A model generated the notes under the pieces. The model was not told the DNA's origin. It did not search any database and saw only the letters and a program-made list of their open reading frames with translations. The position numbers were made by a program, and so were the translations under genes. From NCBI GenBank assembly GCA_963514005.1, contig OY740797.1, forward strand, positions 19,716,001 through 19,780,000: a stretch of 64,000 nucleotides of DNA. The letters run 5' to 3'. The stretch comes from Raja brachyura (lineage: Eukaryota). Of the stretch, positions 4,354-51,500 are shown piece by piece (position 1 is the first letter of the stretch; each line of letters opens with the position of its first letter).

Positions 4354-4379
4354 TTATTTCATCGAACTTCTATTAACAT
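4354..4379 (-). CDS. Gene A candidate terminal cytoplasmic exon (DVNRSSMK*)
   Basis: Strongest acceptor downstream of the TM exon (taatcgtcttgttttctttag|); phase 1 gives D-V-N-R-S-S-M-K-stop. Not independently confirmed. Confidence 0.35.
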
Positions 4380-4983: not shown

Positions 4984-5082
4984 CATTTGTTACGTTTAGT
5001 CTGCGTACTGTCAACATTATTATCGGGACTAAAATTGCCAATCCGCCCACTACACATCCGAGAACCAGTGCGAGATCATAGT
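4984..5082 (-). CDS. Gene A transmembrane exon
   Basis: ctgcttcccctgcag|...|gtaaga, 99 nt, phase 1-1; DYDLALVLGCVVGGLAILVPIIMLTVRRLNVTN is a hydrophobic helix followed by an RR stop-transfer. Confidence 0.85.
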
Positions 5083-5349: not shown

Positions 5350-5377
5350 CTGAAGAAGTGTCTTGACACGAAACGTC
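5350..5377 (+). ncRNA. Minimal hammerhead-ribozyme core within a Penelope-related short repeat
   Basis: CTGAAGA-A-GTGT-CTTG-ACAC-GAAAC-GTC. Stem II carries a compensatory change relative to GGGT-CTCG-ACCC in other copies. Stem I is only ~2 bp. Confidence 0.55.
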
Positions 5378-7073: not shown

Positions 7074-7365
7074 CTGGCTTGACCGTGTAGTCAACTCTGG
7101 CCGGGAGCGCAAGGGAGACATGTGACACTAGGCATGTGTAAATATCAACGCGCCAGGTAGGCTTCGTTACTTCGAGAAAACTGGAAACCACATACAACCC
7201 CCCCCACGCTACTGGTGTTAACAGTTTTTTCCCCGGTGAAAATTGTTACACCATTTCTTTGCCAGGATATTTCGACTTCCTTCGGAAAAAAGGCAGCCGT
7301 TTGACACACAAGGTTTGGCGGCGAACTGCCATTAACTTGGCTAATGCTCAGGGGAGTTGGCGGAG
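7074..7365 (-). CDS. Gene A Ig C1-set exon (one extra G)
   Basis: ttttcttctgttacag|...|gtaaga. Frame-corrected translation APPTPLSISQVNGSSPPNLVCQTAAFFPKEVEISWQRNG...GLYVVSSFL...YTCLVSHVSL carries the C1 hallmarks C-x4-FFP, W and YxCxVxH. Confidence 0.88.
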
Positions 7366-7456
7366 CTGTAACAGAAGAAAAAAAAAGTTATGTTGTATGT
7401 CTTCTTTCCATGTCAATGAATACTTTGTGGTACACCTTGTGAAGACAACGCAGTAT

Positions 7457-9093: not shown

Positions 9094-9155
9094 ATCAAAT
9101 AGAACAAGTTGTCCAACAACTTTAGGCTGTGCACGCCACACGAAAGAAGAAGACG
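9094..9155 (+). mobile_element. 5'-truncated copy of the HDV-ribozyme short retroposon family
   Basis: Shares the 3' part (caactttaggctgtgca.gcca.acg.aagaagaag) with 41083-41228; flanked by direct repeat CGAGGGTCG (9085-9093 / 9159-9167). Confidence 0.75.
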
Positions 9156-10030
9156 AATCGAGGGTCGTGTAAATGGAAACCACGATTTGCAAGGACAGGA
9201 GCACTGCTGTTTCCTCAAAATACCTGTACATTCTGTTCGTGCTTTACAGATATTTGGCGGTTAAATAAAAATGCTCGAATACACAAAAATGTAACTCAGC
9301 GGGACAGACAGCATCTCCAGAAAGAAGAATTGGGTGACGTTTAGGGTCGAGACACTTCTTCAGTCTGAATCGTCACTCTTTCCTTCTCGCCAGAGATGCT
9401 GCCTGTCCCGCCGAGTAACTCCAGCATTTTTTGTCTATCTTTATTACATCCAAATCATGAGAGTTCCCTTTATTTACCCTTTTCCTGACTAAGGATAAAA
9501 CTAATATATTTCGGGATAACAATTCGTTATAACAAATACTGGGTAGACAATTTGTAGCGGTTGCGTCAAAAAGGATAAGATTGTGTGTGGACTGTGGGTG
9601 GACACTGTTCTGGCGAGGTTGTAACCGTGAGGAAAAAGCCGCCATACTTCCCACAGTCCAGATTAAATATCCAAGTGGCTTGAACATCTTCCCTGAAAAA
9701 CAATGTAGTCACTGAACCATGGGAATGACGAAGAGTGAATCTGAATCGTGGGCGATAGCAGCGCGACTCTACAGGAGGACAACGGAAAAGGCTTTCTGGG
9801 AGCACGAAACGAGAACAACCCTCCCTCGCCACACACATGCTGCCCGATCAGCTGATTATTTCCAGGCATTTCAGTTTTCAAGTCGGCGGAGTGGTTTGAT
9901 TTCATAACAAAAAATCCATTATTAGTAATCACCCAGTTTTAACCTAGTGATAAAATGTAATGTTATTCGCATTAGAGAGCTTAATTTATACTACAGAGAG
10001 CTTAAGTTCTCTCCGTCATGGGATACTTAC

Positions 10031-10336
10031 CCATTACAGTGAGCCTGGAGCCAGGTCCATCTCCGATAGATTGCTGCTGATGTTTCACTTTACAATAATA
10101 AACCCCGGAGTCCGCGACTTTCGCATTCAGCAGAACAAAATCCGCACTGGCCTTTTTGGTATCAATTATTTTTCTGCTGTCTGGTTCTATAAATGTCTTC
10201 TCTCCCCATCTCCACCAATAAACATCAGGAGCAACTTGTTGTATTGAGAATGTGCAGAACATGGACGCATTGCTTCCTCTGTGGACGGTCAGGTCTTTCG
10301 GGAATTGGTCCACTTTGGTCGAAGTTACTTCGTTGG
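10031..10336 (-). CDS. Gene A Ig V-set exon with germline-fused J-like strand
   Basis: ttaatttctggcag|...|gtaagt, 306 nt, phase 1-1; VDQFP...MFC...VYWWR...DSGVYYC...GDGPGSRLTV. Confidence 0.92.
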
Positions 10337-10538
10337 CTGCCAGAAATTAAGGAAAAATACTGAAAACAGTTGCACAAACTGGACAAGGAAAATGAATCAA
10401 GAGTTGAAAATTACAAAAGTAAATTAGAATTAGCGACAAGCTGGAGAAGCACTGTGACTAAATTCGCAGTGGGTAACTAAATGGAGTATTCTAAAACAGA
10501 ATTAAATATGATCGACCGGCACATATATCTAAAAGTAC

Positions 10539-10593
10539 CTTGCCAAACTGTCACCAGAAGGGTCAGGTACCGAAATGATGCTTTCACTGTCAT
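10539..10593 (-). CDS. Gene A leader exon
   Basis: ATG at 10593; MTVKASFRYLTLLVTVWQ + G|gtactt, 55 nt, phase 1. Same length, position and donor as the gene B leader. Confidence 0.8.
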
Positions 10594-10599
10594 GTTTCA

Positions 10600-10740
10600 A
10601 GAAAGTTGTTGGCCGCTTGTTGCAAATGAGGGACGTTTCCTAAAAGATTCTTGCAAGAAAGAGTTGCTGGTGAATAAATATTTTCCGCTTGTGACCATGA
10701 CATAGGATGTCACATGACGGTGAAGTGGGTTTCAAATTTG
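10600..10740 (-). promoter_or_regulatory. Putative proximal promoter of gene A
   Basis: Block conserved with 35110-35220: tgcaaatgag (octamer-like, 7/8 match), E-box GTCACATGAC at 10709-10718, and agtgggtttca. Confidence 0.4.
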
Positions 10741-20291: not shown

Positions 20292-23200
20292 CTTTTTTTT
20301 TTTGTAATATTTTTTTATTTGAAGTAATCAGTTTACAATGTATAGCTTACTTTATAAACTAACACCTTAATTCAATATTACTACAAATAACATATCAATA
20401 CTTAATATCTTCTATTTTTTGGAAATAAAGAAAAAGATATATAAAAGAGAAAAAAAGAGAAAAAAAAAGGGAATTAAAAAAAAAATAAAAAATTTCCCAC
20501 ATACTTCAACCATAAAAAAAAAGAAAATTTAAAAAACAAAAATATTACATATATATAAACAAAACTAAATACATTATACGAAATACTATTTCATACAGTA
20601 ATATCTATAATAAATGCGCAATAATATCAAATGTAAGTAAGTTATTTGCATCGGATTCCGTAGGGTGCCCGTCGAGCCGTGATTCCAAGAATAGCTACTT
20701 CTCTAAATACTGTATATATGGAGACCATATCGATTCAAAAGAATTATACCTGTCCAAAAGGACAAATCTAATTCTTTCCAAATTCAACGTCTCCAACATC
20801 TCTGCTTTCCACATTTTAATTGTTGGGGATAATGTTCCCTTCCAAAATTTAAGTATCATTTTTTTCCCTATTATTAAACAGTAATCAAAAAAATTTATTT
20901 GATTTACTGTGAGTACCAAATTTGGCTCCGGGATTCCAAATATTATTAATTTTGGTTCTGGGTCGAGTTCAACCTTAAGAACTTCCGAAACAACTTTAAA
21001 AATTTCAATCCAATAATAATTCAACCGTGGGCACGTTACAAAACTATGTATTAAATTTCAGATTCAGATTCAGATTCAGATTCAATTTTAATTGTCATTG
21101 TCAGTGTACAGTACAGAGACAACGAAATGCATTTAGCATCTCCCTGGAAGAGCGACACAGCAAATTATTTGAATAAATAACAATAAGTGTCCGGGGGGGG
21201 GGGGGGGGGGGGGTGATTGGCAGTCACCGAGGTATGTTGTTGAGTAGCGTGACAGCCGCCGGAAAGAAGCTGTTCCTGGACCTGCTGGTTCGGCAACGGA
21301 GAGACCTGTAGCGCCTCCCAGATGGTAGGAGGGTAAACAGTCCATGGTTGGGGTGAGAGAGGTCCTTGGCGATGCTGAGCGCCCTCCGCAGACAATGCTT
21401 GCTTTGGACAGACTCAATGGAGGGGAGCGAGGAACCGGTGATGCGTTGGGCAATTTTCACCACCCTCTGCAATGCCTTCCGGTCGGAGACAGAGCAGTTG
21501 CCATACCAAACTGTGATGCAGTTGGTAAGGATGCTCTCGATGGTGCAGCGGTAGAAGTTCACCAGGATCTGAGGAGACAGATGGACCTTCTTCAGTCTCC
21601 TCAGGAAGAAGAGACGCTGGTGAGCCTTCTTGATCAGAGTTGAGGTATTGTGGGTCCAAGAGAGGTCGTCGGAGAGGTTGACTCCCAAGAACCTGAAGCT
21701 AGAAACACGTTCCACCTCCGTACCGTTAATGTGGATGGGGGTGTGCGTGCCGCCCCTGGACTTCCTGAAGTCTACAATGAGCTCCTTGGTCTTCTTGGAG
21801 TTAAGGGCCAGGTTGTTGTCAGCGCACCATGCTGCTAAGTGCTGGACCTCCTCCCTGTAGGCCGACTCATCGTTGTTGCTGATGAGGCCAATCACCGTTG
21901 TATCATACGCATACTTGATGATGGTGTTTATTACTATGTACAGGTGTGCAGTCATAGGTGAAGAGGGAGTAGAGGAGGGGGCTCAGCACACAGCCCTGTG
22001 GAACGCCGGTGTTCAGGGTGAGGGTTGAAGAGGTGTGCTTGTCTAACCTAACAGACTGGGGTCTGTTGGTTAGAAAGTCCAGTATCCAGTTGCAGAGGGA
22101 AGGAGCGATGCACAGATTACCGAGTTTGGCGATCAATTTTGATGGTATAATGGTGTTGAATGCTGATCTGTAATCGATGAACAGCATTCTTACGTAAGTG
22201 TCTCTGTTGTCGAGGTGGGAGAGGGCGGAGTGAAGTGCCGTTGAGATGGCATCCTCCGTACTCCTGTTCTTGCGGTAGGCAAACTGATAGGGATCCAGTG
22301 TGGGGGGTAGGCAGCTTTTGAGGTGTGCCAGGACCAGCCTCTCGAAGCACTTGGTGATGATGGGGGTAAGTGTAACTGGGCGGAAGTCGTTGAGGCTTGC
22401 CGCAGTGGAGTGTTTTGGCACTGGCACGATGGAGGTGGTTTTAAGGCACGTGGGGACAACTGCCTGGGCAAGTGACAGGTTGAAGATATCAGTCCAGACG
22501 TCTGCCAGCTGCGCCGCACAGACCCTGAGCACGCGCCCGGGGATGCCGTCAGGGCCAGCAGCTTTACGTGCATTAGTCCTACTCAGTGCCACGTATACGT
22601 CGTGCATTAGTCCTACTCAGTGCCACGTATACGTCGTTTTGCTTCAAATTTGCTTCAAGATTCTTACATTTATCACAAATAGAGGAGAGACTAGGAAAGA
22701 TACTTTTTAATTTGGTTTTCGAGTAGTGTAATCTATATATAACTTTAAATTGTATCAATGTGTGTCTGGCATTCAAAGAACACCAATGTATTCTTTGTAA
22801 GCTTTCTTCCCAAGTTTCTTTTATGATAGGTAATCCAATTTCATTTTCCCATGCTTGACGATATGTTTCAGTTGTTGGGTTCTCTTTATCTAAAATAATA
22901 TTGTATATATAAGCTATAAGCTTATCCGTATTTGGATGTAAATTAAACAGCTCATCTAATAAGCCTGATTCTTTATTTTTATAGTCTTGTGTGTTGCATT
23001 TAATGAAATCTCTAATTTGTAAATACCTAAAATGGTGTTGTGAAGGTAGTCCAAAAATATCTTGTAACTCTTCAAATAATAAAAATTTTCCATTTCTATA
23101 AAGGTGTCCTATCCTTTTCATTCCTGAATCCTCCCACAGTCTAAACCCCGCATCTAAGGTTGAGGGTTTAAACAGTGTGTTATTCCTAATTGGTAACCTA

Positions 23201-24614
23201 AAAGAAAGATTATCCAGATATAAGGTCTTAACTATCTGTTTCCAAATACGCCTATTATTATGAATTATAGGGTTGTCCCTATAAGTCTTTTTTTGTACTT
23301 CCTTTGGTGCGAAAATAATCGACTCTATATTGAAAGGTAAACAGTCTTCCTTTTCCATTTTTAACCACATTGGTTCATCATCCATATTTACCCACCAAAA
23401 ATTCATATTCTTAATCTGGACTGCCCAAAAGTAGTATAGAAAATTTGGAAGTGCTAGCCCTCCATTTATCTTAGACTTACATAAATGTTTTTTACTTATT
23501 CTATGACTTTTGTAATCCCAAACAAAACTATTAACAATATTATCAATTTAAAAAAAAAAAATTTTGGGGAGAAAAAAAGGAATTGCCTGAAATAAATATA
23601 ACAATTGTGGTAAAAAAATCATCTTTATAGCATTAATTCTACCGATCATAGATATAGGGAGTGTTTTCCAATATGAAATGTTTTTTTTAAGTTTCTCTAA
23701 TAATTGATAATAATTAGCTTTAATTAATAATTTATAGGATTTAGACACATTGATTCCTAAATATTTAAATTTATCTGTAACTATTTTTAATGGGTATTTT
23801 TGTAATATATTTACATTTATACCAGTTATAGGCATAATGTCACTTTTATTCCAATTAATCCTATATCCTGAAAATACGCTAAATTCATTTATAACATTGA
23901 ATAACTTGGGAATACTACATTCCGGCTTAGTAATATAAATCAGAATATCGTCTGCATATAAAGATATCTTATTATTTGTTGTGTCAGTATTATACCCATA
24001 TATTTCAGGTTCTGATCTGATTCTTTCAGCCAGAGGTTCTATCACCAAGGCAAATAATAAAGGGGATAACGGACATCCCTGTCTGCATCCCCTAAAAAGT
24101 CTAAATTTAGGTGATAGTATTTGATTGGTTAAAATTCTTGCAGTAGGGTTAGAATATAATATTCTTACCCATTTACAAAATCCATCCCCCAGTTGATACT
24201 TTTCCATTATATTAAATAAATATGACCATTCCACCTGGTCGAATGCTTTTTCAGCATCCAACGATATAACTGCTAATTCTATATCTCTTCTTCTTCTCGA
24301 GTAGATAATATTAAACAAGCGTCTAAGATTATGTGATGAGTAACGTTTTGGAATAAAACCTGTTTGATCATAATGTATTATTTTGGAAATCACTAAACTT
24401 AGTCTCCGAGAAAGTACTTTAGTTAATATTTTTTGATCAGTATTTAAAAGGGCAATCGCTCGATATGATCCAGGATCTTCCAGATCCTTATCTAATTTAG
24501 GAATTAATGTGATTGTAGATTCATTTAAAGACTCTGGTAATTTTCCTAACTCATAGGTGTGTCTGTACACTATTTGTAATCTTGGTGAAAGTAGATCATG
24601 AAATTTTTTTTTTT
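20292..24614 (-). mobile_element. 5'-truncated L1-clade LINE (RT to 3' UTR), interrupted by a Rex1 insertion
   Basis: ORFs 23548..24570 ([25 protein letters not shown]), 22579..23406 and 20695..21024; AATAAA and poly(A) at ~20292-20320; same family as 59385-64000. Confidence 0.95.
21058..22636 (-). mobile_element. 5'-truncated Rex1/Babar-clade LINE nested inside L1
   Basis: [13 protein letters not shown]...DIFNLSL...[19 protein letters not shown]...[17 protein letters not shown]...[12 protein letters not shown] (YADD mutated, one frameshift); (AATCTG)n 3' tail at ~21058-21084. Confidence 0.92.
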
Positions 24615-25599
24615 TGCAGCAATTACAACTGTTGTGCTTTACTTCATTAATGAGGGAAATTAATGAGGAAGGTCTTAAGAGATATGATTTATGTACATTT
24701 GATAATTCAGGTATTTATCAGAGATAGTCAGTAGAGCTTTGTGCGGGGGTAAATCCTGCCTCACTAATTTGATTGAGGTGAGAATTTTATGAGCGAGAAC
24801 TAAGCAGTTCGTCAAGGTGGGATTGTAGGCATTTTTTTGATGTGACCTTCACTAAAGCATTTGACATGGTTTCACATTGTAGGCTGCTTCAGGAGATTAG
24901 GACACATTGGACCAAATGTAAATTGGCTAATTGCATCTTAAGTTGACATGGTGAAAGTAGACAGTTTGTAGTGGTGGAAAGCTACATTTCTGACTGCCTT
25001 GGCAATTAATTCCACACAACCATGGCCTTCTGTATGGAAATAAAACTTTCCCTCACTTATTTTTTAAATTTATCCTGTGTCAACTTAAACAATGCTATTT
25101 AATTCCAGACTCTCCTGGTGAAGGGAAATGACTACCTACTGTCCTATCTATGCTTCTGATAAATTTATAAATCTTGATGTATTCACACCCAGTCTCGTAC
25201 ACTTCAGTGAGAATAATCCAAGTCAACACAATTTCTTCTACTAACTACAGCTTATCATTCTCGACCTGATCCTGGTGAAATTCTTCTGCAAACTCTCTAT
25301 GGCTACTATATTTTTCTGTAGTGTGGTGATCTGAACTGTATGTAGTATGCCAAAGGCACACACAAACAGCACATGCTTACTCACATGTTTGAGAGCTTTA
25401 TGCTCCCACTGACTTCCCGGGAAAACCTATCTGCATTTTATGATTTTCCTTCCATGTTCTTGTTCATGACACTCGGTGGAGCATACTTCTTACTTACATG
25501 GATACATTTAGCTCTAAAAATACTCAAGAAGCACAACATTATTCAGGATAAAGAAACACTATTCATTTTATGTTGGTGAATGGGTATCAATGAGAAGTC

Positions 25600-26640: not shown

Positions 26641-28590
26641 TTATAATTTTACACGGTATTTAAAGAATTCCTCAGTTACAGTTGCTCAGTTATGTTGCAG
26701 TTGCTCAAGACATTAGTGAGGCCGCACTTGGAGTATTGTCTTCAGTTTTCGTCACCCTATTGTAGTGAATGTTATTGTTGCAGAGATGATTTGCGAGGAT
26801 GTTGCCAGGAGTAGACTGGGGAGGTTGAGCACGGTAGGACTTTATTCCTTGGAGCGCAGGAGTGATCTTATACAGATATATGATCATGAGGGTAATTGAT
26901 AGGGTAAACGTCTACTCTGTCAAACCTTAAAACTTCCATTAGGCTACCCAATTACATTGTTTATCCATGCAGCCAAGCCTGAATCAATGTTTTATTTCTG
27001 GATAAGTATTGCCTCATTTTGTACACTGTACTCCAGTTCAATCCACTTACCTTATTCTTTTCTGCTTTTCAATTCTGTCTAAGTAAAAATGAACAGTGCC
27101 ATGTTCTTTTTATATGGCCCCATTAATCTCTATTCATAGGTTTGTGTATTAATGCTCCCAAACACCTTAGCTCATCCAATAACTGGATATTATTTGGTGT
27201 TTATCTTTCCAGGAATGTGGGCATCATCAACAAATCCAGCATTGATCATCCGTTGCCCTGAGAAGATGGACATTATCCGCAGGCCTCTAATTACTGCATT
27301 CCTTCATTGAATGAACTCCCACAATGCAATTGGGAAGGAAGCACTCAGATTTAGAAGTAAACCTGATGATGAAATCATTTACCATTAGATTTAAACAAAT
27401 CTGACATTGAGAACTACAACCATTTTGTTGCATTTGATTATGGCTCGTTTATACTTTCAATATCCATCCAATTTCATTTAATTTGCAGTTGAAAAGGTAT
27501 ACATCAAGGGATACTATTACAAAAATGATGTCAATGCATAAAATGGTTAAGTTACAACTTATCTGTTATAAGTCATTAAGTCGTAAATTCAGACAAACTG
27601 ATAGAGCATATTTAATAAAGACTCGATATCTATGCAATCGATTCATTGCTCAAAAATATATTCTAAGAATTAATTTCTTACCGATATCATTTTGTGGAAG
27701 AAATTAAAAATTTAGAATGAGTTAAATCTGGCATAAAATTAGATCTAATAAACACCAGTGATAAATAGATTACACCGTTTGAACTTTTAAAACATTTCAA
27801 GGCATAACTCTTTCCCGTCAAGATCATAGACAGTTTATTTTTCTACTCTCATAGTTTATTTCATACCACATTTGAAGTTTGTCAGTTTTGCATTTATATA
27901 TCTTTCTGGAAGAAAGGGACTGAAAAAATATACAAATTCAAATGGATGCAACCTAATAGTTACCAGCATCTTTATATCAGATCTAATTTCGCATATTTAT
28001 TATAATTTAATTGGAAACGATTTGTCAGGAAATAACTTTTTCCAATATATGTTTTGAGCAGTGGATTAAGTTTATAACCTTTGCCTCATTTGTGAAATAT
28101 TCTGCACTAATTAATTTGGATTCAACATTTGTGGTATAATTTGAATCAGGCAGGCGGGTTGCAGACATCGGAGTCATGGTGACTTAACTCTTTAATCACC
28201 AGCCTCAGGCACGCTGAGGTGATGGAATGATGGGAGAGCGCAACATTCAATGTTGGCACCGCCCAGATGGAAAAAGGTCATGATGCTAAATTGCAGAAAT
28301 GGATTGACAAAGTCTGTCGTACTTCGCTGAAGCCACAAGGTGGAGCCCGCCTCTCATGCAGTGAAAAGAGGCTCCCTATGGCAGATAAAAGCAATTTCTT
28401 TTTTCTGATGAAGGATGCAGAAGAGCTAGACATCAGTTCGGAATTGGGATTTGGCCTTTCAACAACAACAACATCAGGAAGCATATTTTTATTTAGGTCT
28501 TAGGATTTAGTGCAGCTTTTAAGACTGAGATTGTGGTCTGGTTTGGAGTAAATAGTGCAATTTTCAGTATAATACGTTTAGAATCAGTCA

Positions 28591-28696
28591 GGGGTGGGAG
28601 ATTGCAACCTTCACGTGGTTGTTTCGACGAATGCAATTAACATGGTGGTCACGTGATCTTGCAACTTTAGGCTGTGAATGCCGTACACAAGAAGAG
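28591..28696 (+). mobile_element. HDV-ribozyme short retroposon, internally deleted copy, antisense in the gene B 3' UTR
   Basis: Begins exactly at GGGGTGG; TSD GA(A/T)TCAGTCA at 28581-28590 / 28697-28706; lacks the CCGCCC of the P1 3' strand. Confidence 0.8.
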
Positions 28697-28713
28697 GATT
28701 CAGTCAGTTGTTT

Positions 28714-28723
28714 CTAGCATGAT
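28714..28723 (-). CDS. Gene B last coding exon ((G)SC*)
   Basis: ctttgtttctttaacag|A TCA TGC TAG after an 80-nt intron. Read-through of the previous exon would also stop immediately (GGG TAA). Confidence 0.5.
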
Positions 28724-31700
28724 CTGTTAAAGAAACAAAGCATTTAAAGTTTATATCAACTGAATTATTGTGATACGCGTTTCTCGTCCCCTAACGGTCT
28801 TACCCGTTTTCGATCACATGCTCGGAGGTCTTTCCATGTTCCTCTCTGTTCATAGTTTGCTCTGATGTCTCGACCAATCGGTCAACCTTTACCACGGAGC
28901 CTAGATAACACAAATTAATTGGGTGCTATAGTGCAGATTTGGGTGCTATAGTGCAGATTTGGCGATCGTGAGGTATTTTGAATGTTAACATATTTTCTTA
29001 CACCACTCTTATTATTATTATGTGCCGACAAGATATCCAATGGGCGCCGATTCCCAATTGTCCATTTTGTGCTCCCGACTAAAATCGATTTGTAGCCTTT
29101 GTATCCAGATGGGTTCGAAGTCAAGGCGAGAGAATCACTACTAAATTATACTCTGAATAATACTCTGCATGTCAGTTTTGAAGACATTCCCAACGCTTCA
29201 TCGGACAGGGATCAGCCTCGGCTGGGCTCCACCCTTCAGATGCAAAAACAATGAGATGGGGACCAATTCGGGCAGATGCAGAAATCATAACATTCAGCGG
29301 AGTCCTGACTGTCCACAAACATGAAAGAAGGAACGGCGATAGTGCCGACAACTTTTAAATCAAGTGATTGGGAAATAACCAATTTATCCAATATGCATTG
29401 GCCCAAGATAAGCAGTTGCACAAAGCTGTTACTTGAGGAAGAAAACCGCTGCACGTGGCGACATGTAAATTACAACCGCTCTCATTTATTTTCCTATTAA
29501 TATAATTGTTTTATAACAGTTCGATTAGAAGACGGTATTGTTATCCTCGATATTAACGATGATGAACAATTTATTTTTCTAAGCTCTTTCAATGCTCTCT
29601 TTTGATTTGGGATTTTTATAAGTGAATTTGGAACACTGGTGATAACGGAGACTTGACAGAATTATTGTCCTCAGTGAGTCTGGGGATGGAGAACTGATAT
29701 AATTCTGTACCATTTGGGGGATCACGATCTTGTTATTAACAATGTGTAAATTGTGGCCAAATAGCATCAAATGACGTAGCGACATTTGATTCTCCGCAGC
29801 ACCATTTTACAGGAAATTTGAAGTTGAACTCTAGAAAGAAGCTTGATTCACCTTTGGCAGAGCTTGATCCAAAAACAATTCGCAAGGTAGCCAACACCAG
29901 TAGAATGATCAATGTACCTCCTACATTGCGAAGGACATGGACAACGCGAGCCGAACCTGCAGACGTAAAACATCATTGAGCGATAAGACAATTATCTCAA
30001 GTGAATGAACAAACTATAGAATTTTATTTGTGTAAAGAGCTTTATCAAGTGTCACTATACTACAAAAATATCCAAATAAAATAGCAACATTAGGCAAATG
30101 GACACTGCACAAAATAAACGCGAGATCTTGCTTCCAACATGAACAATATTGTTATTGCATTAAATGTCAACGAGTGATACATTTCCAAGTCAAGCTAGTG
30201 TGCGATTTGGAAGACAGCCTGCAGGCCATGGTGTTCACATGCACCAGCTGCCCTTGTCCTTGTTGGTGATCCAACCAGTCCAGAAATCTATCAATGTCAA
30301 TCCTCCCTTTTCAAACATCCTCAATGCTTCGAGGTAGGGAATTACAAAGAGTCACACATTCCTGAGTAGAGTCATTGTGTCACAGAATGATACAGTGTGG
30401 AAACAGGCCCTTCGGCCCAACTCGCCTACACCGGCCAACAATGTCCCAGCTACCCTAGTCCCACTTACCTGTGCTTGGTTCATAACCCTCCAAACCTTTC
30501 CTATCCATGTACCGGTCCAACTGTTTCTTAAACGATGGTACAGTCCCAGCCTCAACTACCTCCTCTGGCAGCTTGTTCCATATACCCTCCACGCGAAAAT
30601 GTTACCCCTCGGATTCCTATTAAATATTTTCCCCTTCACCTTGAATTAATGTCCTCTGGTCCTCGATTCCTCTACTCTGGGTAGAATCTGTGTATCTACC
30701 CGATCTATTCCACTCATAATTTTGTATACTTCCATAAGATCTCCCCTCATCCTCCTACGCTCCATGCAATAGAAACCCAGCCTACTTAACGTCTCCCTAT
30801 AGCTCACACCCTCTAGTCATGGCAACATCCTCGTAAATCTGTTTAAGAAGGAACTGCAGATGCTGGAAAATCAGAGGTAGACAAAAATGCTGGAGAAACT
30901 CCTCGAAATACTCTTTGAGGTCATTACCCATCGGTGGCTCCGCACAGATGGGACCGCTTTTATCCCCGAGAGGTCCCACTCTCTCTAGTTATCTTCCCCC
31001 CCCCCCTTTATTTATAAAATCATTTCGGATTTTCTTCTATGGTACCCGCCGGGGCTATCTCTTGGCCCATTTTTGCCCTTTTTAGTTTGCTCCTTAGTTC
31101 CCGAAACACCTACAGGGATGCACGTCCCAACTGCCTGTACCTGTCCCATGCATCCTTCTTGTTTTTGACTAATGTCTCAATTTCCCTTGTCAGCCAAGCT
31201 TCCTTTCGTTTGCCTGCTTCGCTTTTCACTCTAACGGGGACGTACACATCCTGAGCTCTCTTAAGTAAACTTTTAAATACATCCCACTTGGCCGATGTTC
31301 CTTTCCCCTCAAATAACCTGCTCCAGTCAACTTGTGCTAGACCTTCTCTCATACCCCCAAAATAGTGAAATATCGCAACATTACAAAGTAAAATCCCGAC
31401 ATATATAAAGAACGTGTACCTCTATCTCCATCTCACTGATTGTGTCCTTTTGATGATTTTTTGTTTGCTAACACCCCTGTCAAATGCCTTGAAGGTTTAG
31501 TCACGTCACAGCACTATAAATATTGAAGATGCAGATATAATTCAGAAAACAGATTATAGCATATGCGTCAGTTTGCCCGAACTCCCGCGGTGAATAAACA
31601 CGGTTCACATTCAGCCCTTCTCGTCGTGTTTGACCTGTATCCAACAACATTTATAAATCGGATCTGAGGTCTCCCTCTGTTCCCAGCTCTGTTTGCGAGT

Positions 31701-34700
31701 CTTACCTGGCTTGACGGTGTAGTCGACTCTGGCCGGGAGCGCAAGGGAGACATGTGACACTAGGCAGGTGTAAATAACAACGCGCCAGGTAGGCTTCGTT
31801 ACTTCGAGAAAACTGGAAGCCTCATACAACCCCTCCACGCTACTGATATTCACAGGTTCTTCCCCGGTGTAAATTGTTACTCCATTTCTTTGCCAGAATA
31901 TCTTGACTTCCTTCGGAAAAAAGGCAGCCGTTTTACACACAAGTCTGGGCGGCGAACTGCCTTTAATTGGGCTAATGTTCGGGGGAGTTGGCGGCGCTGT
32001 AACAGAAGAAGAAAATATGTTGAATATTTCCTTTCCATTGCCTCGTCACACCGCGACCTTGGACTCTCACTATCAGATCGGTTATCGGTACAATCGCTTT
32101 TACGCTCACTGATTTGTCATTGTTTTCGATTTCACCTTATTGTGGACAGTGAAATATATCCAAGCAATACATAAGGAATCCGAGGTTTGGATGTAGGTAA
32201 TATGCGGGGTTCTGAACAATGTTCTGAAGTGCCAAATCAGGAGCTTGGCGGGGGGGGGGGGGGGGGGGGGTGTATCATCGCTGGTAACAACGTTTTCTGT
32301 TCAGTTCAAAAATGACCGTTTTTTCGCGATTTGGTGCAAAGAATGATACGTGTAGAGCGGAATATCACAGAGACACACAGCACAGCACTGAGCAGCCCAG
32401 CTGACCTACTGCGTCATCAAACCTCCATCTCCATTTATTCAATGTTCATCTCCTATCAACTTTCCTCTTCACTCCTCACCACGACCAATCAACCGGGACA
32501 ATTTACAGAGTTTTCCTACCAGCCTGTGGCATGCGGAATAAACCGGAGCAACGGAGGAACGTCTACGCGTTGAAGGGGAGAACTATATATGGACGCACGC
32601 AGGATCTCGGTCGAACTTGGGTCGCTGAAGTTGTGGGCAGCGCTAACCAATGTAGCACTGTATATATCTAGATATCACCAATATCAATAATCAAGAGGCA
32701 GGCCGTAGTTGCATAGATGAGAGCTTGGTCCACACTTTAGTACCTTGGGGGGGGGGGGCTCAAGTGATACAGCTTTTGGCCCGGGAGGCTTCTCCACAAC
32801 GCTTAACTGCGCCATTTGAAGGCATGATAGAGTTACACTAATAATTATTAAGAAGGAGCTGCAGATGTCTGAAGAATGGTCTCGACCCGAAATGGCACCC
32901 ATTCCTTCTCTCCATAGATGCTGCATGTCCCGCTGAGTTACTCCAGCTTTTTGTGTCTATCTACTGATAATTACGATCGCCGTGCAAATATTAGACGCTT
33001 CGTCAATAAGTACAATACGCGAATGGGAAATCCAAACTTAGACTACGTCTCTTCTACAATTTGGCATTTTCCAAATGTACTCGGTTTGCTGAAGACGTTT
33101 GGTCCGAATAAGATTTCACTTATATCAGCTCAGAGTGGGTCATTTGCGAACGCTGATCTACCTCCGTCGGATCTACAATCAGTAGGTAGCTAGTAGGAGG
33201 CCTCATGTTAAATCGCTCTGCGAGTTGATGACAACTTTACGAGTTTATCATCGAGAATAAATAATTGGGGGGAAACGTGGGGAGACTGAGGACTGAGTCC
33301 TGTAAGAATATAATTGTAAGGACAGGAGCCCTGGCGTTTGCCCCCAAATGCCGTTAAATCTTACTCGTATTTTACAAAGGTTTACAAAGGTTACAAAGGT
33401 ATTTAAACGAGAATCCTCGGAGACGGTGATATTCTGCCCCTGGAGTAAGAATCCATCAAATCAAACCTCTCGGCGGTTTATAGGATTCATCTGTATAATA
33501 ACCATGGTGGTTTGATACGGGGTTCAGCTTTGTTTACAGCCGACGAATAAAAGAGTAGAATATTTAAGGCCGAGGCCGCTCCGTTCTTCAAATCAATCGT
33601 GGGTTGTTTGTGCGTCGGGTCTCTGTGTCACAAACCCTGTTGTCACAAACCCAACGATACCCAATCCAAATGAATATTCTAACATCCCGATCTCGAGAGA
33701 TCAATTTATTTTCTTCTTTCCAGACTTTAAGTGAATAAAGTAACAGATTTCAGAGATAATTTGTAAGGTGGCGCGTAAAAAGCGAAAATTATGTGTGAAT
33801 CAATATGGACTGTAAACACTATTCTTGTGAGATTGTAACCACTATTGGCGTAGAGTGGTGGCGTTTGAATATTGTTTTAAAGAACCTATCCAGGATGGGG
33901 GTGTTATTCCGTTGTCTTCGGGAGCAGAAATGGGACATTCGTATCACAACTAAGATTAAAATATCCACGTGGCTTCAACATTTTCCATTTTCCATGAAAA
34001 ACAATTCGAAAAAAACTTGTAATCTAAGTCATTTGATTTACTACATTCAAACACACCATGGGGTAAATAAAGCGTGAATCTGGATCTGGGTCGTGGGCAA
34101 TAACGCGAAAGTGGACAGCGCGAATCTACAGGAGTACACTGGAAAATTAACTGGAGAAGTACGAAATGAGGAAAATAACATTTTCTCTCTACACAGATGC
34201 CGACCCACTTACGGATTATTTAAATGTATCAGATTTGGAACGGTTTGCTTTTATAGTATAAATCTTATCGAGTTTTTGCCGAGTTATAAAATGTCATGTT
34301 ATTCATAATAGCGAGCTTTACCTGTACCCCGTGCACTTACCGAACACAGTGAGCCTTGAGCCAGGTCCATCTCCGATAGATTGCTGCTGATGTTTCACTT
34401 TACAATAATAAACCCCGGAGTCCGCTACACATGCATTCAGGAGAACAAAATCCGCACTGCCCTTTTTGGTATAAATTATTTTTCTGCTGTCTGGTTCTAT
34501 AAATGTCTTCTCGCCCCATCTCCACCAGTAAACATCAGGAGTAACTTGTTGTATTGAGAATGTGCAGAACATGGAAACATTGGCTCCTCTGTGGACGGTC
34601 AGGTCTTTCGGGAATTGGTCCACTTTGGTTGAAGTTACTTCGAAGGCTGCCAGAAATTAAGCAACAATACTGAAAACAGTTGGCCATCCGGACAAGCAAT

Positions 34701-35102
34701 ATGAACAAAGAGTTAAAAAATTCAAAATATACTAGAATCGGCCATAAACTAATTAAGAAGCACTGTAACTAAATTCGTGATTGGTAACCAACATTCAATA
34801 TTCTAAGGAGATACAAGGAACTGCACCCACTGGTTTACAAAAAAAGACACCGAGTGCTGGAGTAACTCAGCGGCCAAGAGTCTTCTTTAGATTCTGAAGT
34901 AGTTTCGACCCGAAACGTCACCTATCCACGTTCTCTTTAGATGCTGCCTGACCCATGGAGTTCCTCCAGAACTTTGTGTCTTTTTTAAAATAGAATATTA
35001 TAAAACATGACATGACATTCGGAAACCCCACATGTATCTAAAAGTACCATGCCAAACTGTAGCCAGAAGAGTCATGCATCGAACTGATGCTCCAAACGCC
35101 AT
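28714..35102 (-). CDS. Gene B: intact leader-VJ-C1-TM(Arg)-short-tail IgSF receptor, 287-aa spliced model
   Basis: Exons 35102-35048, 34646-34341, 31996-31706, 29956-29852, 28900-28804 and 28723-28714 total 864 nt in one open frame, all GT-AG; candidate AATAAA at 28493-28488. Confidence 0.88.
28804..28900 (-). CDS. Gene B cytoplasmic exon
   Basis: tttgtgttatctag|...|gtaaga; phase-1 open frame GSVVKVDRLVETSEQTMNREEHGKTSEHVIEN, hydrophilic with no Tyr. Confidence 0.65.
29852..29956 (-). CDS. Gene B transmembrane exon with intramembrane Arg
   Basis: ttttacgtctgcag|...|gtgaat, 105 nt, phase 1-1; GSARVVHVLRNVGGTLIILLVLATLRIVFGSSSAK. Confidence 0.82.
30365..31360 (-). mobile_element. CR1 fragments in gene B intron 3
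   Basis: CR1 3' end (~30365-30840) and ORF2 piece MREGLAQVDWSRLF...KWDVFK (31110..31352). Confidence 0.82.
31706..31996 (-). CDS. Gene B Ig C1-set exon
   Basis: cttcttctgttacag|...|gtaaga, 291 nt; APPTPPNISPIKGSSPPRLVCKTAAFFPKEVKIFWQRNG...GLYEASSFL...YTCLVSHVSLALPARVDYTVKP. Confidence 0.93.
34341..34646 (-). CDS. Gene B Ig V-set exon with germline-fused J-like strand
   Basis: ttaatttctggcag|...|gtaagt, 306 nt; VDQFP...MFC...VYWWR...DSGVYYC...GDGPGSRLTVF. Confidence 0.93.
35048..35102 (-). CDS. Gene B leader exon
   Basis: aaaATGG Kozak context; MAFGASVRCMTLLATVWH + G|gtactt, 55 nt. Confidence 0.82.
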
Positions 35103-35109
35103 TTTGCAA

Positions 35110-35220
35110 AATGAGGTGGTCGCTTGCTGCAAATGAGGATGTCTCTTCAACGATTCGTTTAATAAATAGTATTTAATGACGCCAGATATCACGTGACAGT
35201 GCAGTGGGTTTCATATTTAG
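35110..35220 (-). promoter_or_regulatory. Putative proximal promoter of gene B
   Basis: tgcaaatgag, E-box ATCACGTGAC at 35188-35197 and agtgggtttca, all conserved with the gene A upstream block. Confidence 0.4.
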
Positions 35221-35659
35221 TTTTATTTTAAGGCATCCCATCTCATATCCCAGGTGAAACATTTATGCTTGATGTAGAATGTTCTCCTTGACTTCCCGGG
35301 AGCACTTTAGCAACACAATAAAGAATCCCGAGAGCAGAAGTTGTCACTAATTGAATTACACAAACAAAATGGAGACACGAGGAACTGCAGGTGTTGGGCA
35401 TTAATGAAGTGCCCGAAACGTCCATATTACCGTTGTACTACTCCAGTACTTTTTTTACACAAACAAAATTCCGTGTTTTACTAGTTTTCTCTTTCCGCGT
35501 AAATTATTTTTGTACAAAATGCAAGCTATCCAGCACATATAGAGCAAATGGATCCCTCTGATCTGCTGTGTTCCTTCAGCAAAGAACAGAATGCTGGAGG
35601 AACTCAGCGGGTCAGGCAGCATCTGTGGAAGGAATGGACAGACGATATTTTAGATCGCG

Positions 35660-48574: not shown

Positions 48575-51500
48575 GGCCCGAGAGAAGAGCTGGCCGAATT
48601 TAAACATGAAATGAATCTTCAGATGGCAGTGAATGCACAAGCAATACAAGATCAAAAAAAAAAAAAACGGAACGAGCCGCCACCCGAATAGAGGAGCTGG
48701 AAACATGGAGTGTCGCTGCAAACACTATACTCCAAGAAACAATGAAAGACCAGAAGTTACTCGTCGACAAATTGAATGATCTGGAGTCCAGCTCCCGAAT
48801 AAATAATTTGCGGATATACGGTGTGCCAGAGGGTGCGGAAGGTAGCTCAGTGCCTCAGTTTGTAGAGAAACTGCTCAGAAGTGAAATGTCAATTGCTGAA
48901 ATGACAGATTTACAGATTCAACGAGCACACAGATCCCTGGCACAGAAACCAAGCCCTAGTTCCCCTCCGAGATCCATAATTGTCCACTTTCTCCAGTTTA
49001 AAATTAAAGAGATGGTCCTCAAACAGGCAAAAGAAGATCCAACTTGGAGAACGAATGCTGTCTTTTGACCATGACTATACTACCGCTGTAGTACAACAAC
49101 GTAAGGCATACAAACATGTTAAACGCTTCTTAAAAGAGGAAGGAATCCGCTTTCAAACACCCTTTACCAAGATACGTATTCACTGGGAGAGCGGACACCA
49201 AACCTACAACAACGCAAGGGAAGCCGTGCGAGAGCTACAACAGAGAGGCTATAAAGTGGAAGAGCTGCGGGGAGACACAGACATGCCGCCACTGCGTGAA
49301 CAACTCCACCGAACGGCGCAGTGGCAGCTCGTTGAGAGACACGGAGAATCAGAAACAATCAGACGGGCATGGGAGCGCCTTCAAGTATTCCAACAAAAGA
49401 CTCATGCTTGACCCGAGATATGATTATGAAGGTACCCACAGACATGGATAACACAATGGCTTCTGCCACAATATGTTAGAATGCTGAGTTCTTATATGTA
49501 TATTCATAGACAAATCTGTTTATAAGCCTGGTTCTAAAAATATCACCAAGCATCACAGACCTCGTGTGAGTGTAATTAATGTTGATTTCATACAACTTTC
49601 TGTATTAGATAAATCCGACTGTTAGGGAGATCAGCGAAATATTACAGCTAGAATGAATGGAGGGACCCATAGAGGCTTCCCCCCTCAATTTACAAAGGGA
49701 TTTTGGATCTATGGAGGAGAGAGAATACCCTTTTTTGGGAGTCCATATATGTTTTGTTGTTTTGTTTTGCCAGGTAAAACACCTTTGTTTGTTCATATGT
49801 TTTGGTTTGTCGTTCAGAATGGTTCGGGTGTTTATTTGAGGGGATACAGTGAAATTAATCACACTAGTGTAATGATGCAATGTCAATGTTAAGCTGATGT
49901 CTCTAAATGTTAATAGTTTGGGCAATCCAATTTAGAGGGCTAAAGTCATGACTAAATTGAAAAAAGTGAAGATGCATATTATTTACTTACAAGAAACCCA
50001 TTTATCGCGACAAGAGCATGAGAAGCTGAAAAGATTTGGATATAAAAACACATATTATAGCTCATATACTTGTAGTCATAAAAGAGGAGTGGCAATCTTG
50101 ATATCAAACTCAGTGAAATTTGAAATGTTTAAAGAAATAAAAGACAAAGAAGGGAGATATATCATAGTAAAGGGCAAAGTTGATAATAATATCCTGACAC
50201 TGGTGAATTTCTGTGCTTCCCCAGATAGTGATAAACATTTTTTCAAATCAAATCAAATCAAATCAAATCAAATCAAATTTCAAATTGATATTATTGCAAT
50301 GGAAGTAGAAGGAATTTGTATATGTGGGGGTGATCTGAATGTTGTACTGAATCATAGGCTTGATACGACAAGTAAAAAGAAGAATAAGAACCAGTTAACA
50401 AAACTACTAAACACTACCTGTGAAGAATTTGGTTTTCTTGATGTCTGGAGGAATTTTCACCCTCTGGAAAGAGACTATATACATTATTCAATACCGCACT
50501 CAGTTTACTCCAGAATAAACTATTTCTTAATGCAGAAAGAAGACTGTTACAGGATAACGGATTGCAGAATCGGTGTGGCAGATGTATCGGACCATAATGT
50601 CATAAACTTAACAATTCAAATGAACAGTAGAAGGAAAGTGTGGCGATTAAATGTTGGAATATTGAATGATAAAACAACTGTTAATGATATTAAATTGGAA
50701 ATCAAAACTTATCTAGAGGAAAATGACAGGTGGACCCACCCATACTATGGGACTCATTGAAGGCTGTAATACGAGGTAGGTCAATAGCGAGGGCATCACA
50801 TATCAAAAAGGCCAGAATGAAAACATATAATAAGTTGATAACAGACCTGAAGGATTTAGAACAGAAGTACAAAAATAATAAGGATAAGAGAACTTATAAG
50901 CAAATAGAAGATTTGAGGGGCCAAATGGATGGAATATTGGGTCAAGAGGTGGAGAAAAAAAACAAGATTTGTAAAACAGGCACATTATGAGCTTGGCCCT
51001 AAATCCACTAAAATACTTGCCCGAAGGCTACGCAAACAACAGGCTGACAACACCATACACAAAATTAAGGACCCCTGTACACAGAATTTGAAGAGTGATA
51101 CAAAAGAAATAGATTATATATTCCAGGAGTATTATAAAGAATTATATACACAAACTTCTACAGTAGATGGAAAATCAATGAGGACTTTTTTAAGTACAAT
51201 AGATCTGCCCTGTATTGGAGACACACAAAATAAAATAATCACAGCAGAAATATCACTGGAGGAGATAGAGAAGACAATTGGTAGGATGAAATCAAGCAAG
51301 ACCCCAGGCAGCGGTAGCTATAGAATGGTATAAAATATTTTGTAATGAGCTGAACCCACTTCTTCTGAGAACCTTTAACAGGATTATCAAAGAAGGCAAG
51401 ACACCCCCGTCATGGAAAGAGGCAATTATAACATTAATCCCCAAAGAGAACAAAGACAAGGAAAATTGTACCAACTACAGACCAATATCAATTCTGAATG

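What the first reader, a model, noticed from the sequence alone, without database searches (positions are those of the whole stretch)
29852..29956. Paired-receptor signature: near-identical ectodomains, opposite transmembrane chemistry
Seen: the gene B TM (VVHVLRNVGGTLIILLVLATL) has Arg (codon 29930-29928) in its outer third and a short Tyr-free tail. Gene A has Gly-Cys at the aligned position (LALVLGCVVGGLAILVPIIML) and no charged residue. Known: an outer-TM Arg in an xxLRxx context mediates pairing with FcR-gamma/CD3-zeta in NKp46, NKp30, LILRA and FcalphaRI. Inference: B is an adaptor-coupled activating receptor and A a non-activating counterpart for a similar ligand. Caveat: I found no convincing ITIM exon for A, so it may be a decoy or short-tailed form rather than inhibitory.
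Basis: partly seen in the sequence, partly recalled or inferred. Interest (0 to 1): 0.75.

Follow-up and report, generated by a model that had tools for sequence, protein, structure and literature searches.

The report
Arg-TM member of shark/ray SIRP-like receptors
Two neighbouring immune-receptor genes of a cartilaginous fish share similar outer domains but have different membrane anchors, one carrying an arginine typical of activating receptors; this is an ordinary paired-receptor layout, and the uncharged partner may be a broken copy.

Summary
The exon at 29956-29852 (minus strand) is there as described. It has AG/GT borders and phase 1-1, and its peptide is SARVVHVLRNVGGTLIILLVLATLRIVFGSSSAK, with Arg codon CGC at 29930-29928. 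It follows an intact leader, VJ exon and C1 exon (gene B).

Gene A, 24 kb away, has the uncharged TM exon 5082-4984. "Near-identical ectodomains" is overstated:
- The V exons are 93 of 101 residues alike.
- The C1 exons are 73% alike in the first part and 93% in the last.
- A's C1 exon has one extra G (G8 run, 7205-7198) that breaks the frame in this assembly. DNA contigs could not settle whether this is real.

Both genes belong to a large family of sharks, rays and chimaeras that NCBI auto-names "SIRP-alpha-like". Its members have one of:
- a plain TM with a Tyr-motif tail;
- a plain TM with a short tail;
- a basic residue in the outer TM with a short tail.

A's TM exon is clearly of the plain class (HMM E 1.2e-8). 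B's resembles ray TM exons, best Mobula P0105 with the Arg aligned (1 of 5000 shuffles), but it does not match the shark Arg-class profile.

No Tyr-motif exon for A lies in the window, and no RNA data were available. The paired-receptor reading is plausible and unproven: a new member of a known kind. The scan had already noted this family on neighbouring DNA (s1-881415).

The parts
35048..35102 (-). Gene B leader exon (ATG at 35102-35100, 55 nt, ends in phase 1)
   Evidence: Read. tblastn shows A's leader as its paralogue.
34341..34646 (-). Gene B VJ exon (306 nt, phase 1-1). V-set/I-set Ig domain ending in the J-like GDGPGSRLTVF.
   Evidence: Pfam V-set E 3e-8, I-set E 2.5e-8.
31706..31996 (-). 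Gene B C1-set exon (291 nt, phase 1-1), intact
   Evidence: (C1-set E 1.8e-11).
29852..29956 (-). Gene B transmembrane exon, the finding itself (105 nt, phase 1-1)
29928..29930 (-). Arg codon CGC (residue 9 of the exon peptide). It lines up with the Cys of the plain-TM class.
10539..10593 (-). Gene A leader exon (ATG at 10593-10591, 55 nt)
10031..10336 (-). Gene A VJ exon (306 nt), 93 of 101 codons give the same residue as in B
7074..7365 (-). Gene A C1-set exon, 292 nt. One extra G relative to B shifts the frame, with a stop at 7147-7145.
   Evidence: two tblastn pieces in different frames.
7198..7205 (-). G8 run in A's C1 exon (GGAGGGG in B), the site of the frameshift
   Evidence: Not resolved.
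4984..5082 (-). Gene A transmembrane exon (99 nt, phase 1-1), uncharged, of the family's inhibitory-type class. Its Cys codon TGT lies at 5056-5054.
   Evidence: (E 1.2e-8).

Best explanation
The window holds two tandem minus-strand members of a receptor family of cartilaginous fish. Each is built as leader, germline-joined VJ domain, one C1-set domain and a single TM. Automatic annotation calls the family SIRP-alpha-like.

Gene B is intact through its TM exon. That exon looks like the rays' ordinary TM exon in which the conserved Cys, four to five residues into the membrane, is replaced by Arg. The part of the tail it encodes has no Tyr.

The most likely function (inferred, not shown) is that this Arg pairs with the acidic residues of a dimeric ITAM adaptor of the FcR-gamma/CD3-zeta type. 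B would then be an activating or adaptor-dependent receptor.

Gene A carries the family's plain TM exon, the kind that in relatives is followed by Tyr-motif (ITIM-like) tails or by short tails. So A is the non-activating counterpart in design. In this assembly, however, it is frameshifted in C1, and its tail exons are not in the window. It may therefore be an inhibitory gene, a short-tailed form or a pseudogene.
For: Gene structure:
- Searches give the exon borders. Pfam finds V-set/I-set and C1-set domains.

Family:
- I read 52 of the 150 listed hits of a search of 1.84 billion representatives with B's V exon.
- 8 of the 10 proteins looked up are from sharks, rays or a chimaera, mostly named 'tyrosine-protein phosphatase non-receptor type substrate 1-like'.
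- A profile of 48 family proteins ranks human SIRP-alpha (2wng) 4th of 10904 PDB matches, over V plus C1.

Two classes:
- Of 59 distinct proteins, 22 have a plain TM with a Tyr-motif tail and 12 have a basic TM with a short tail, by a crude rule.
- Ray examples of a basic residue in an otherwise ordinary TM are P0105, P0179, P0188, P0192 and P0184.

A's TM:
- HMM E 1.2e-8, the only hit in the window.

B's TM:
- It has the same junction-11-GG-11-basic spacing as P0022.
- Against P0105, 1 of 5000 shuffles reach its score, with the Arg aligned.

Rule for adaptors:
- An Arg near the top of the TM is the stated contact for gamma/zeta in the review PMC13107469 (passages).
- CD247 (zeta) is expressed in bamboo shark T cells (PMC11372145, passages).
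Against: - No RNA run holds the locus, so use of the exon and the rest of B's tail are unknown.
- Exon grammar alone is within chance.
- The profile of the shark Arg-class TM does not pick up B's exon (E 2, fifth among noise).
- B's TM against A's TM is not significant (555 of 5000 shuffles).
- The Arg is Gly in Hemitrygon P0178, which is 82% identical to Mobula P0105.
- Only 15 residues lie between B's two Arg, so both could snorkel and need no partner. The best Kyte-Doolittle window (residues 11-29) leaves out the first Arg.
- A has a frameshift in the assembly.
- A has no Tyr-motif exon in 1-4984.
Confidence: 0.55

Rival explanations
1. B is a short-tailed, adaptor-independent member (decoy, adhesion or ligand-like, in the manner of SIRP-gamma). 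Its two Arg simply mark the two membrane interfaces and bind nothing.
For: - The hydrophobic core between R9 and R25 is 15 residues long.
- The best 19-residue hydropathy window is 11-29, which leaves out R9.
- The Arg is not conserved between Mobula P0105 and Hemitrygon P0178.
- Rays have plain-TM short-tailed members without Tyr (P0186, P0187, P0189).
Against: - Borders taken from homologous plain TMs put R9 five residues inside the membrane.
- Basic residues recur at or near this place in short-tailed relatives.
- The known gamma/zeta-coupled receptors also have their Arg near the top of the TM.
Confidence: 0.2
2. The exon at 29956-29852 is not used. It is a chance open frame or a decayed exon, and B is secreted, uses another exon, or is a dying gene.
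For: - Phase-compatible hydrophobic candidates arise by chance at about the observed rate.
- There is no RNA evidence.
- No skate protein of the family turned up in three word-index searches of 28, 5 and 34 rows.
- The shark Arg-class HMM is blank.
Against: - It is the nearest candidate, 1.75 kb after C1, as in A (2 kb).
- It has the highest hydropathy of the three loci.
- Its spacing from the exon junction to GG, and from GG to the basic residue, equals that in P0022.
- Similarity to P0105 and P0178 is reached by 1 and 5 of 5000 shuffles.
- The other candidates (25395-25294 and 19186-18944) do not look like TM helices.
Confidence: 0.15
3. There is no working pair here. A is a pseudogene, and the locus is birth-and-death debris of a fast-evolving cluster in which B is the only live gene, if any is.
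For: - A's C1 exon has a +1 frameshift.
- No tail exons lie in the 5 kb downstream, which is full of retroelement ORFs.
Against: - This single-base slip in a homopolymer is the only defect seen in A's four exons.
- After the slip, A still reads like B in B's frame (39 of 42 residues; dN/dS 0.33 on 6 differences).
- The contigs of runs X1 and X6 over this stretch are each one letter shorter than the window, so the extra G may be an assembly error or one allele.
- A's leader, VJ and TM exons are open with good splice sites.
Confidence: 0.35

Closest known systems
SIRP family (SIRP-alpha inhibitory, SIRP-beta activating through DAP12, SIRP-gamma short-tailed)
   Same: - N-terminal V domain with a J-like G-x-G strand, followed by a C1-set domain.
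- The family profile ranks SIRP-alpha 4th and SIRP-gamma 9th of 10904 PDB matches.
- NCBI auto-names many members SIRP-alpha-like or SIRP-beta-1-like.
- Relatives carry several Tyr motifs of the xTYAxL and TVYAQT kind in long tails.
- The family has inhibitory-type, charged-TM and short-tailed forms side by side.
   Different: - One C1 domain here, not two.
- The charged residue is an Arg near the top of the TM. SIRP-beta has a Lys that binds DAP12 (review listing PMC12975943, abstract only).
- Orthology and synteny were not tested.
- With B's V exon alone, no SIRP chain was among the 60 PDB rows shown, out of 62 matches.
FcR-gamma/CD3-zeta-coupled receptors with an Arg near the top of the TM (CD89, NKp46, NKp30)
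   Same: - Arg in the outer part of a single TM.
- Polar residues one turn above it (His in B; Q and N in CD89's QNLIR).
- No Tyr motif of its own in what is seen of the tail.
   Different: - The ectodomain is unrelated (V plus C1 rather than C2/I-type domains).
- B has a second Arg, not an acidic residue, at the inner end.
- Adaptor pairing is untested.
UrIg and UrIg2, the non-rearranging VJ-C genes of elasmobranchs
   Same: - Germline-joined VJ exon with a split leader, and C1-type domains.
- UrIg2 (9dmx) is the second-best PDB match of B's C1 exon, though at only about 28 bits per domain.
   Different: - UrIg2 has 9 to 11 C domains, and UrIg several (PMC12227049, section 7 read).
- The genes here have one C1 and then a TM.
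PRARP (non-rearranging VJ-C1 genes first described in chicken, Fu et al. 2019)
   Same: VJ plus C1 plus TM layout, as far as I recall. It is named among joined-VJ genes in PMC11599192 and PMC10751288 (passages).
   Different: I could not compare them. The paper is not in the library and I held no PRARP sequence.
Other paired Ig-like receptor families (KIR, LILR, CHIR, teleost NITR and LITR)
   Same: Linked genes with similar ectodomains, where the activating form arises from an inhibitory one by a basic residue in the TM and loss of the tail. That evolutionary route is recalled, not taken from a call.
   Different: Different domain types and different lineages.

Membership tests
Paired activating/inhibitory receptor pair (as a design) | Two linked genes with closely similar ligand-binding domains | tested here: met
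   The genes are tandem, 24 kb apart, on the same strand. The V exons are 93 of 101 residues alike. The C1 exons are 73% alike (first 56 residues) and 93% (last 42). This is similar, not near-identical.
Paired activating/inhibitory receptor pair (as a design) | One member has a basic residue inside the TM and a short tail without Tyr motifs | tested here: inconclusive
   The Arg is at residue 9 of B's TM exon, the fifth residue of the TM by homology borders. Only 10 tail residues are seen, and the exon ends in a donor site.
Paired activating/inhibitory receptor pair (as a design) | The other member has ITIM/ITSM motifs in its tail | tested here: inconclusive
   A's TM exon is of the class that carries such tails in relatives. 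No such exon lies in window 1-4984. The tail may lie outside the window.
Paired activating/inhibitory receptor pair (as a design) | Both members are functional genes | tested here: inconclusive
   B is open through four exons. A has a +1 slip in a G8 run. Contigs of two runs are one letter shorter somewhere in 7160-7466 and 7101-7484, but the place was not listed.
Paired activating/inhibitory receptor pair (as a design) | The activating member needs an acidic-TM ITAM adaptor | not testable with these tools
   This needs co-expression and co-precipitation.
SIRP family | V-set domain with a J-like motif, followed by C1-set domains | tested here: met
   Pfam V-set/I-set and C1-set. The V exon ends in GDGPGSRLTVF.
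SIRP family | Three-domain ectodomain (V-C1-C1) | tested here: not met
   There is only one C1 exon between the V and TM exons in both genes. tblastn finds two V and two C1 exons in the whole window.
SIRP family | Sequence relationship to SIRP closer than to other V-C1 proteins | tested here: inconclusive
   With the family profile, SIRP-alpha is 4th of 10904 (E 3.2e-32). The three rows above it are chains of 433 to 523 residues (an IgA1 heavy chain, UrIg2 V-C1-C2-C3 and an entry called CT3), against 327 for SIRP-alpha. With B's V exon alone, no SIRP chain is among the 60 rows shown. No tree was built.
SIRP family | Orthology by synteny | not tested
UrIg/UrIg2 | VJ domain followed by a string of several C domains | tested here: not met
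   One C1 exon, then a TM exon, against 9 to 11 C domains in UrIg2.
PRARP | Membership by sequence | not testable with these tools
   No PRARP sequence or paper text was available.
Shark Arg-class TM of this same family (R, 16 apolar residues, then D/E-H) | Match to the class profile | tested here: not met
   hmmsearch gives E 2 for B's exon, which ranks fifth among noise. The mean z is 1.0 against 11 members and significant only for Mobula P0105. MAFFT does place the Arg in the same column.

The most novel reading that the evidence does not exclude
This V-C1 family is the cartilaginous-fish counterpart of the SIRPs, and activating forms arise in it again and again from the inhibitory TM exon by single-base changes. 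B would be a fresh case (TGY Cys to CGY Arg at the G-C-x-x-G-G motif). It joins Mobula P0105, P0188 and P0192, Pristis P0179 and the Lys form P0184. Sharks keep a separate, older Arg class (R, 16 apolar residues, D/E-H) whose layout recalls the FcR-gamma-coupled TMs of mammalian LRC receptors. If so, pairing through an Arg near the top of the TM with gamma/zeta-type adaptors goes back to the common ancestor of jawed vertebrates.
Probability: 0.3. Interest if true: 0.5.

Novelty: new member of a known kind. Interest (0 to 1): 0.35.

Why it matters
Paired activating and inhibitory receptors are a recurring answer to pathogen pressure. They are well described in mammals, birds and bony fish, but hardly at all in sharks and rays. 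In four searches of the held library I found no paper that describes this V-C1 family; it exists only under misleading automatic names.

A skate locus with a plain-TM gene and an Arg-TM gene side by side gives a concrete, cheap test: wild type against Arg-to-Leu, with skate gamma, zeta or DAP12. The test would show whether adaptor coupling of this kind already existed in the oldest living jawed vertebrates.

On its own the locus is an expected kind of thing, and one partner may be dead.

Tried and rejected
- RNA evidence. The look-up of sequencing runs on 27000-36000 found no RNA holder, only contigs of unknown or DNA kind. So the splice of C1 to the TM exon and B's last exon could not be checked.

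- Reads were laid on gene A (4700-10650) to test the G8 run. Contigs of X1 (7160-7466) and X6 (7101-7484) are each one letter shorter than the window. The place of the missing letter was among the rows not shown. It could equally be the T9 run in the intron just upstream of the exon. Unresolved.

- Hidden exons. I looked for a hidden second TM exon of the other type in either gene and found none (tblastn; HMMs).

- Tyr-motif tail exons. I looked for them for A and B with tails of 30 relatives (tblastn), a motif scan and a tail HMM. The only result was one poor candidate (ITDYAKL, 4552-4535), which has no acceptor-like context. Rejected.

- A match of B's exon to the shark Arg class. Rejected as not significant.

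- UrIg membership. Rejected on domain number.

So there is no exon map of relatives, no fold and no fold search.

- Hydropathy. DeepTMHMM is not on hand.

- Other limits. Supplements of papers were not opened.

- Spliced model.
Full report
WHAT IS AT THE COORDINATES. On the minus strand, 29956-29852 is a 105-nt open piece. It is preceded by AG and followed by GTGAAT. Read in the frame that continues a phase-1 intron, it gives SARVVHVLRNVGGTLIILLVLATLRIVFGSSSAK. The window is vertebrate DNA full of retroelements. Earlier notes of the scan call it a skate. I did not verify the species, but every close relative I could name is from a shark, ray or chimaera.

THE TWO GENES. All exons below are in phase 1-1 with AG/GT borders.

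- Gene B:
  - leader 35102-35048 (55 nt, ATG at 35102);
  - VJ exon 34646-34341 (306 nt, ending in GDGPGSRLTVF);
  - C1 exon 31996-31706 (291 nt);
  - TM exon 29956-29852.
- Gene A:
  - leader 10593-10539;
  - VJ exon 10336-10031;
  - C1 exon 7365-7074;
  - TM exon 5082-4984, whose peptide is YDLALVLGCVVGGLAILVPIIMLTVRRLNVTN.

Pfam calls the V exons V-set/I-set and the C1 exons C1-set. tblastn finds exactly two V exons and two C1 exons in the 64 kb, and no hidden copy of either TM exon in the other gene.

HOW ALIKE THE ECTODOMAINS ARE. They are less alike than stated.
- blastn aligns only the exons and their near flanks: V 87.6% over 474 nt and C1 88.8% over 365 nt. The TM exons do not align at all.
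- Codon by codon, the V exons are 92.7% identical (93 of 101 residues, dN/dS 0.36). The first 54 C1 codons are 87.7% identical (dN/dS 0.89) and the last 40 are 95% (dN/dS 0.33).
- Intron flanks are 77 to 86% identical.

A's C1 exon is 292 nt. A run of eight G (7205-7198) stands where B has GGAGGGG. This shifts the frame and gives a stop at 7147-7145. tblastn confirms it as two pieces in different frames. After the slip, A still reads like B in B's frame (39 of 42 residues).

- A contig of run X1 lies on 7160-7466 with 306 letters for 307 places.
- A contig of X6 lies on 7101-7484 with 383 letters for 384 places.
- Each has one gap, but the gap's place was among the rows not printed. The stretch also holds a T9 run in the intron.
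- X10 does not reach the G run, and no piece of X3 was listed there.

So the frameshift may be an assembly slip, one allele, or real in all. I put this at about even odds.

THE FAMILY. B's V exon alone was searched against 1.84 billion representatives. It gave 466 proteins at E up to 0.001, of which 150 were listed.
- Many listed hits are giant multi-Ig proteins that score by summing many weak stretches.
- I read the 46 single-stretch hits of about 130 to 430 residues, at 36 to 67% identity, plus six others: 52 of the 150.
- Of 10 looked up by name, 8 are chondrichthyan (Heterodontus twice, Mobula, Narcine, Scyliorhinus, Carcharodon, Chiloscyllium, Callorhinchus). One is an unnamed ENA fragment and one is a multi-V turtle protein.
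- The automatic names are 'tyrosine-protein phosphatase non-receptor type substrate 1-like' (that is, SIRP-alpha-like), 'NCR3 ligand 1-like' and 'tapasin-related-like'.
- Word-index searches with P0028, P0105 and P0022 added 28, 5 and 34 rows (some proteins recur between the searches). All named rows are from sharks, rays or the chimaera, and none is from a skate.
- A profile of 48 members ranks human SIRP-alpha (2wng) 4th of 10904 PDB matches (E 3.2e-32, one stretch over V plus C1) and SIRP-gamma 9th. Light chains and heavy chains of antibodies follow.
- With single exons the picture is vaguer. C1 matches IgA CH1 and UrIg2 at about 27 bits per domain. V matches DCC and Robo domains, V-NAR and TCR-alpha weakly.
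- UrIg and UrIg2 themselves have many C domains (PMC12227049, sections 7 and 16 read), so these genes are not UrIg.

TWO TM/TAIL CLASSES. I sorted 67 family proteins into 59 distinct ones by a crude rule: a basic residue within four places before, or inside, the 15-residue hydrophobic core. The result was:
- 22 with a plain TM and a Tyr-motif tail;
- 7 with a plain TM and a short tail;
- 2 with a plain TM and a long tail without motif;
- 12 with a basic TM and a short tail;
- 4 with a basic TM and a Tyr motif;
- 12 without a TM (cut or secreted models).

By eye, some 'basic' calls are false (P0059, P0068, P0106, P0108).

The clear Arg class in sharks reads R, then 16 apolar residues, then D/E-H, with tails of 8 to 40 residues. 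Its members are P0028, P0160, P0066, P0083, P0096, P0165, P0172, P0174 and P0176; P0175 has Q in place of R.

Rays show basic residues set into an otherwise ordinary TM:
- Mobula P0105 (ICRSIGGG, 12-residue tail);
- Pristis P0179 (VYRSAGGG, Tyr-free tail);
- Mobula P0188 and P0192 (IFRSALGG);
- Mobula P0184 (a Lys).

Rays also have plain-TM members with short Tyr-free tails (P0186, P0187, P0189).

WHERE A AND B FALL.

A's TM exon is unmistakably of the plain class.
- An HMM of 20 such TM segments hits it at E 1.2e-8 and hits nothing else in the window.
- Its mean z against those 20 is 5.8.
- Like them, it ends in ...x-G at the exon border.

B's exon is harder to place.
- The HMM of the 11 Arg-class segments (ten shark segments plus Mobula P0105) gives E 2, which is noise.
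- B against A is not significant (555 of 5000 shuffles).
- B does resemble ray TMs. The number of shuffles out of 5000 that reach its score is 1 for P0105, 5 for its stingray relative P0178, and 54 to 170 for P0196, P0186, P0023, P0191, P0179, P0188 and P0192. P0169, P0199, P0020 and P0184 are not significant. That call tested 14 segments and one search tested 31, so the best value survives correction only modestly.
- The spacing supports homology. From the exon junction there are 11 residues to GG in B, A and P0022. From GG there are 11 residues to the first basic residue in B and P0022, and 12 in A (read).

On that register B's Arg stands where A and most plain TMs have the Cys of G-C-x-x-G-G. 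In DNA this is TGT in A (5056-5054) against CGC in B. That place is the fifth residue of the TM, counting from the border used by P0022 (DTK|FILAC...).

The same place is R in P0105 and P0179 but G in P0178, which is 82% identical to P0105. So the Arg is recurrent rather than conserved.

IS THE ARG IN THE MEMBRANE?
- Kyte-Doolittle windows give 2.24 for residues 11-29, which leaves out R9 but holds R25. They give 1.96 for residues 4-24, which holds R9. A scores 2.78.
- Only 15 residues separate the two Arg, too few to span the bilayer alone. So at least one Arg is buried, or both snorkel.
- The review PMC13107469 (passages) states that CD89 binds FcR-gamma through an Arg near the top of its TM, with polar residues one turn above. 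It also says NKp30 and NKp46 are assumed to do the same with zeta/gamma. B's layout (His three places above the Arg, Asn after it) is compatible with this.
- It is also compatible with an interfacial Arg that binds nothing.
- One candidate adaptor, CD247, is expressed in bamboo shark T cells (PMC11372145, passages). I did not look for skate FCER1G or TYROBP.

IS THE EXON REAL? By grammar alone this cannot be said.
- Three loci in the 19.7 kb after B's C1 exon fit 'AG, phase 1-1, GT, hydrophobic window'. They gave 12 border combinations, against a mean of 8.8 in shuffles.
- The finding's exon is the nearest candidate (1.75 kb after C1; A's is 2 kb). It is the most hydrophobic (2.66 against 2.09 and 2.33). 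And it is the only one with the family's spacing and likeness.
- No RNA run holds the locus.

TAILS.
- B's exon encodes RIVFGSSSAK after the core and then a donor site. Read through the donor, the frame runs another 39 codons, none of them Tyr.
- No Tyr-motif exon for A or B was found in the window by tblastn with 30 tails, by motif scan or by a tail HMM.
- A's TM exon is only 5 kb from the window's start, so its tail may lie outside. An earlier, unchecked note speaks of a duplication breakpoint truncating a receptor about 6 kb beyond that edge (s1-881433).

LITERATURE.
- Searches for this family under SIRP, shark, cartilaginous fish, ITIM, paired receptor and adaptor names found no paper that describes it (listings and abstracts only).
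Its own paper is not held, so membership could not be tested.
- Supplements were not opened.

VERDICT. It is overstated for the likeness of the ectodomains, and it overlooks A's frameshift. The paired-receptor reading fits the family's make-up and is the best single explanation, at about 0.55 for B as a charged-TM, adaptor-type member. The odds that both partners work are lower. This is one more member of a well-known kind of system, in a lineage where such systems are little described.

Noticed in passing
window 59106-59456 (-), with open frames 57506-59107 (-): A retrovirus-like remnant. One ORF matches the C-terminal domain of MLV-type integrase (Pfam MLVIN_C, E 1.2e-12). The neighbouring ORFs have no Pfam match. 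I only observed it; earlier notes describe an endogenous retrovirus just beyond the window's end.
   Followed up: partly
window 59777-63646 (-), 20698-24714 (-), 49936-53663 (+): Long LINE-type ORFs with reverse transcriptase (RVT_1 E 5.5e-37 for 59777-62092). The first one sits next to the retroviral remnant.
   Followed up: partly
window 7287-8082, 5297-5495, 9078-9475: These are very high-copy repeats. Summed contig depth in all four runs reaches 10^5 to 10^6 here, against about 10 to 40 elsewhere. 7458-7898 matches 40052-40478 at 79%.
   Followed up: no
window 7056: Contigs of runs X1, X3 and X6 all carry two extra letters (CT) behind this place, in the intron after A's C1 exon. So the assembled window differs from all three read sets here.
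   Followed up: no
window 36006-37810 (-) and 44727-45254 (-): Two copies of a retroelement whose ORFs share a motif of the IYIGETKRRLGDRF kind next to a weak reverse-transcriptase match (RVT_1 E 7.7e-5). From memory this looks like the GIY-YIG nuclease of Penelope-like elements. Pfam found nothing for the second copy.
   Followed up: partly
proteins P0028, P0160, P0066, P0083, P0096, P0165, P0172, P0174, P0176 (sharks): The shark Arg-class TM reads R, 16 apolar residues, then D/E-H. From memory, mammalian FcR-gamma-coupled receptors (NKp46, CD89, GPVI, LILRA) have the same R-16-acidic spacing. I did not check this against their sequences.
   Followed up: no
proteins P0184 (Mobula) and P0197 (Hemitrygon): These are ray relatives with a Lys (P0184) or an Asp (P0197) in place of a Gly of the TM's GG motif. 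They are further charged-TM variants of the plain exon.
   Followed up: no
window 5077: Contigs of X3 and X6 (other organism labels) read T for C here. On the minus strand this changes the second codon of A's TM exon from Asp to Asn.
   Followed up: no
window 55314-55592 (+): A 93-residue open frame rich in acidic and aromatic residues, with no Pfam match. Its nature is unknown.
   Followed up: partly
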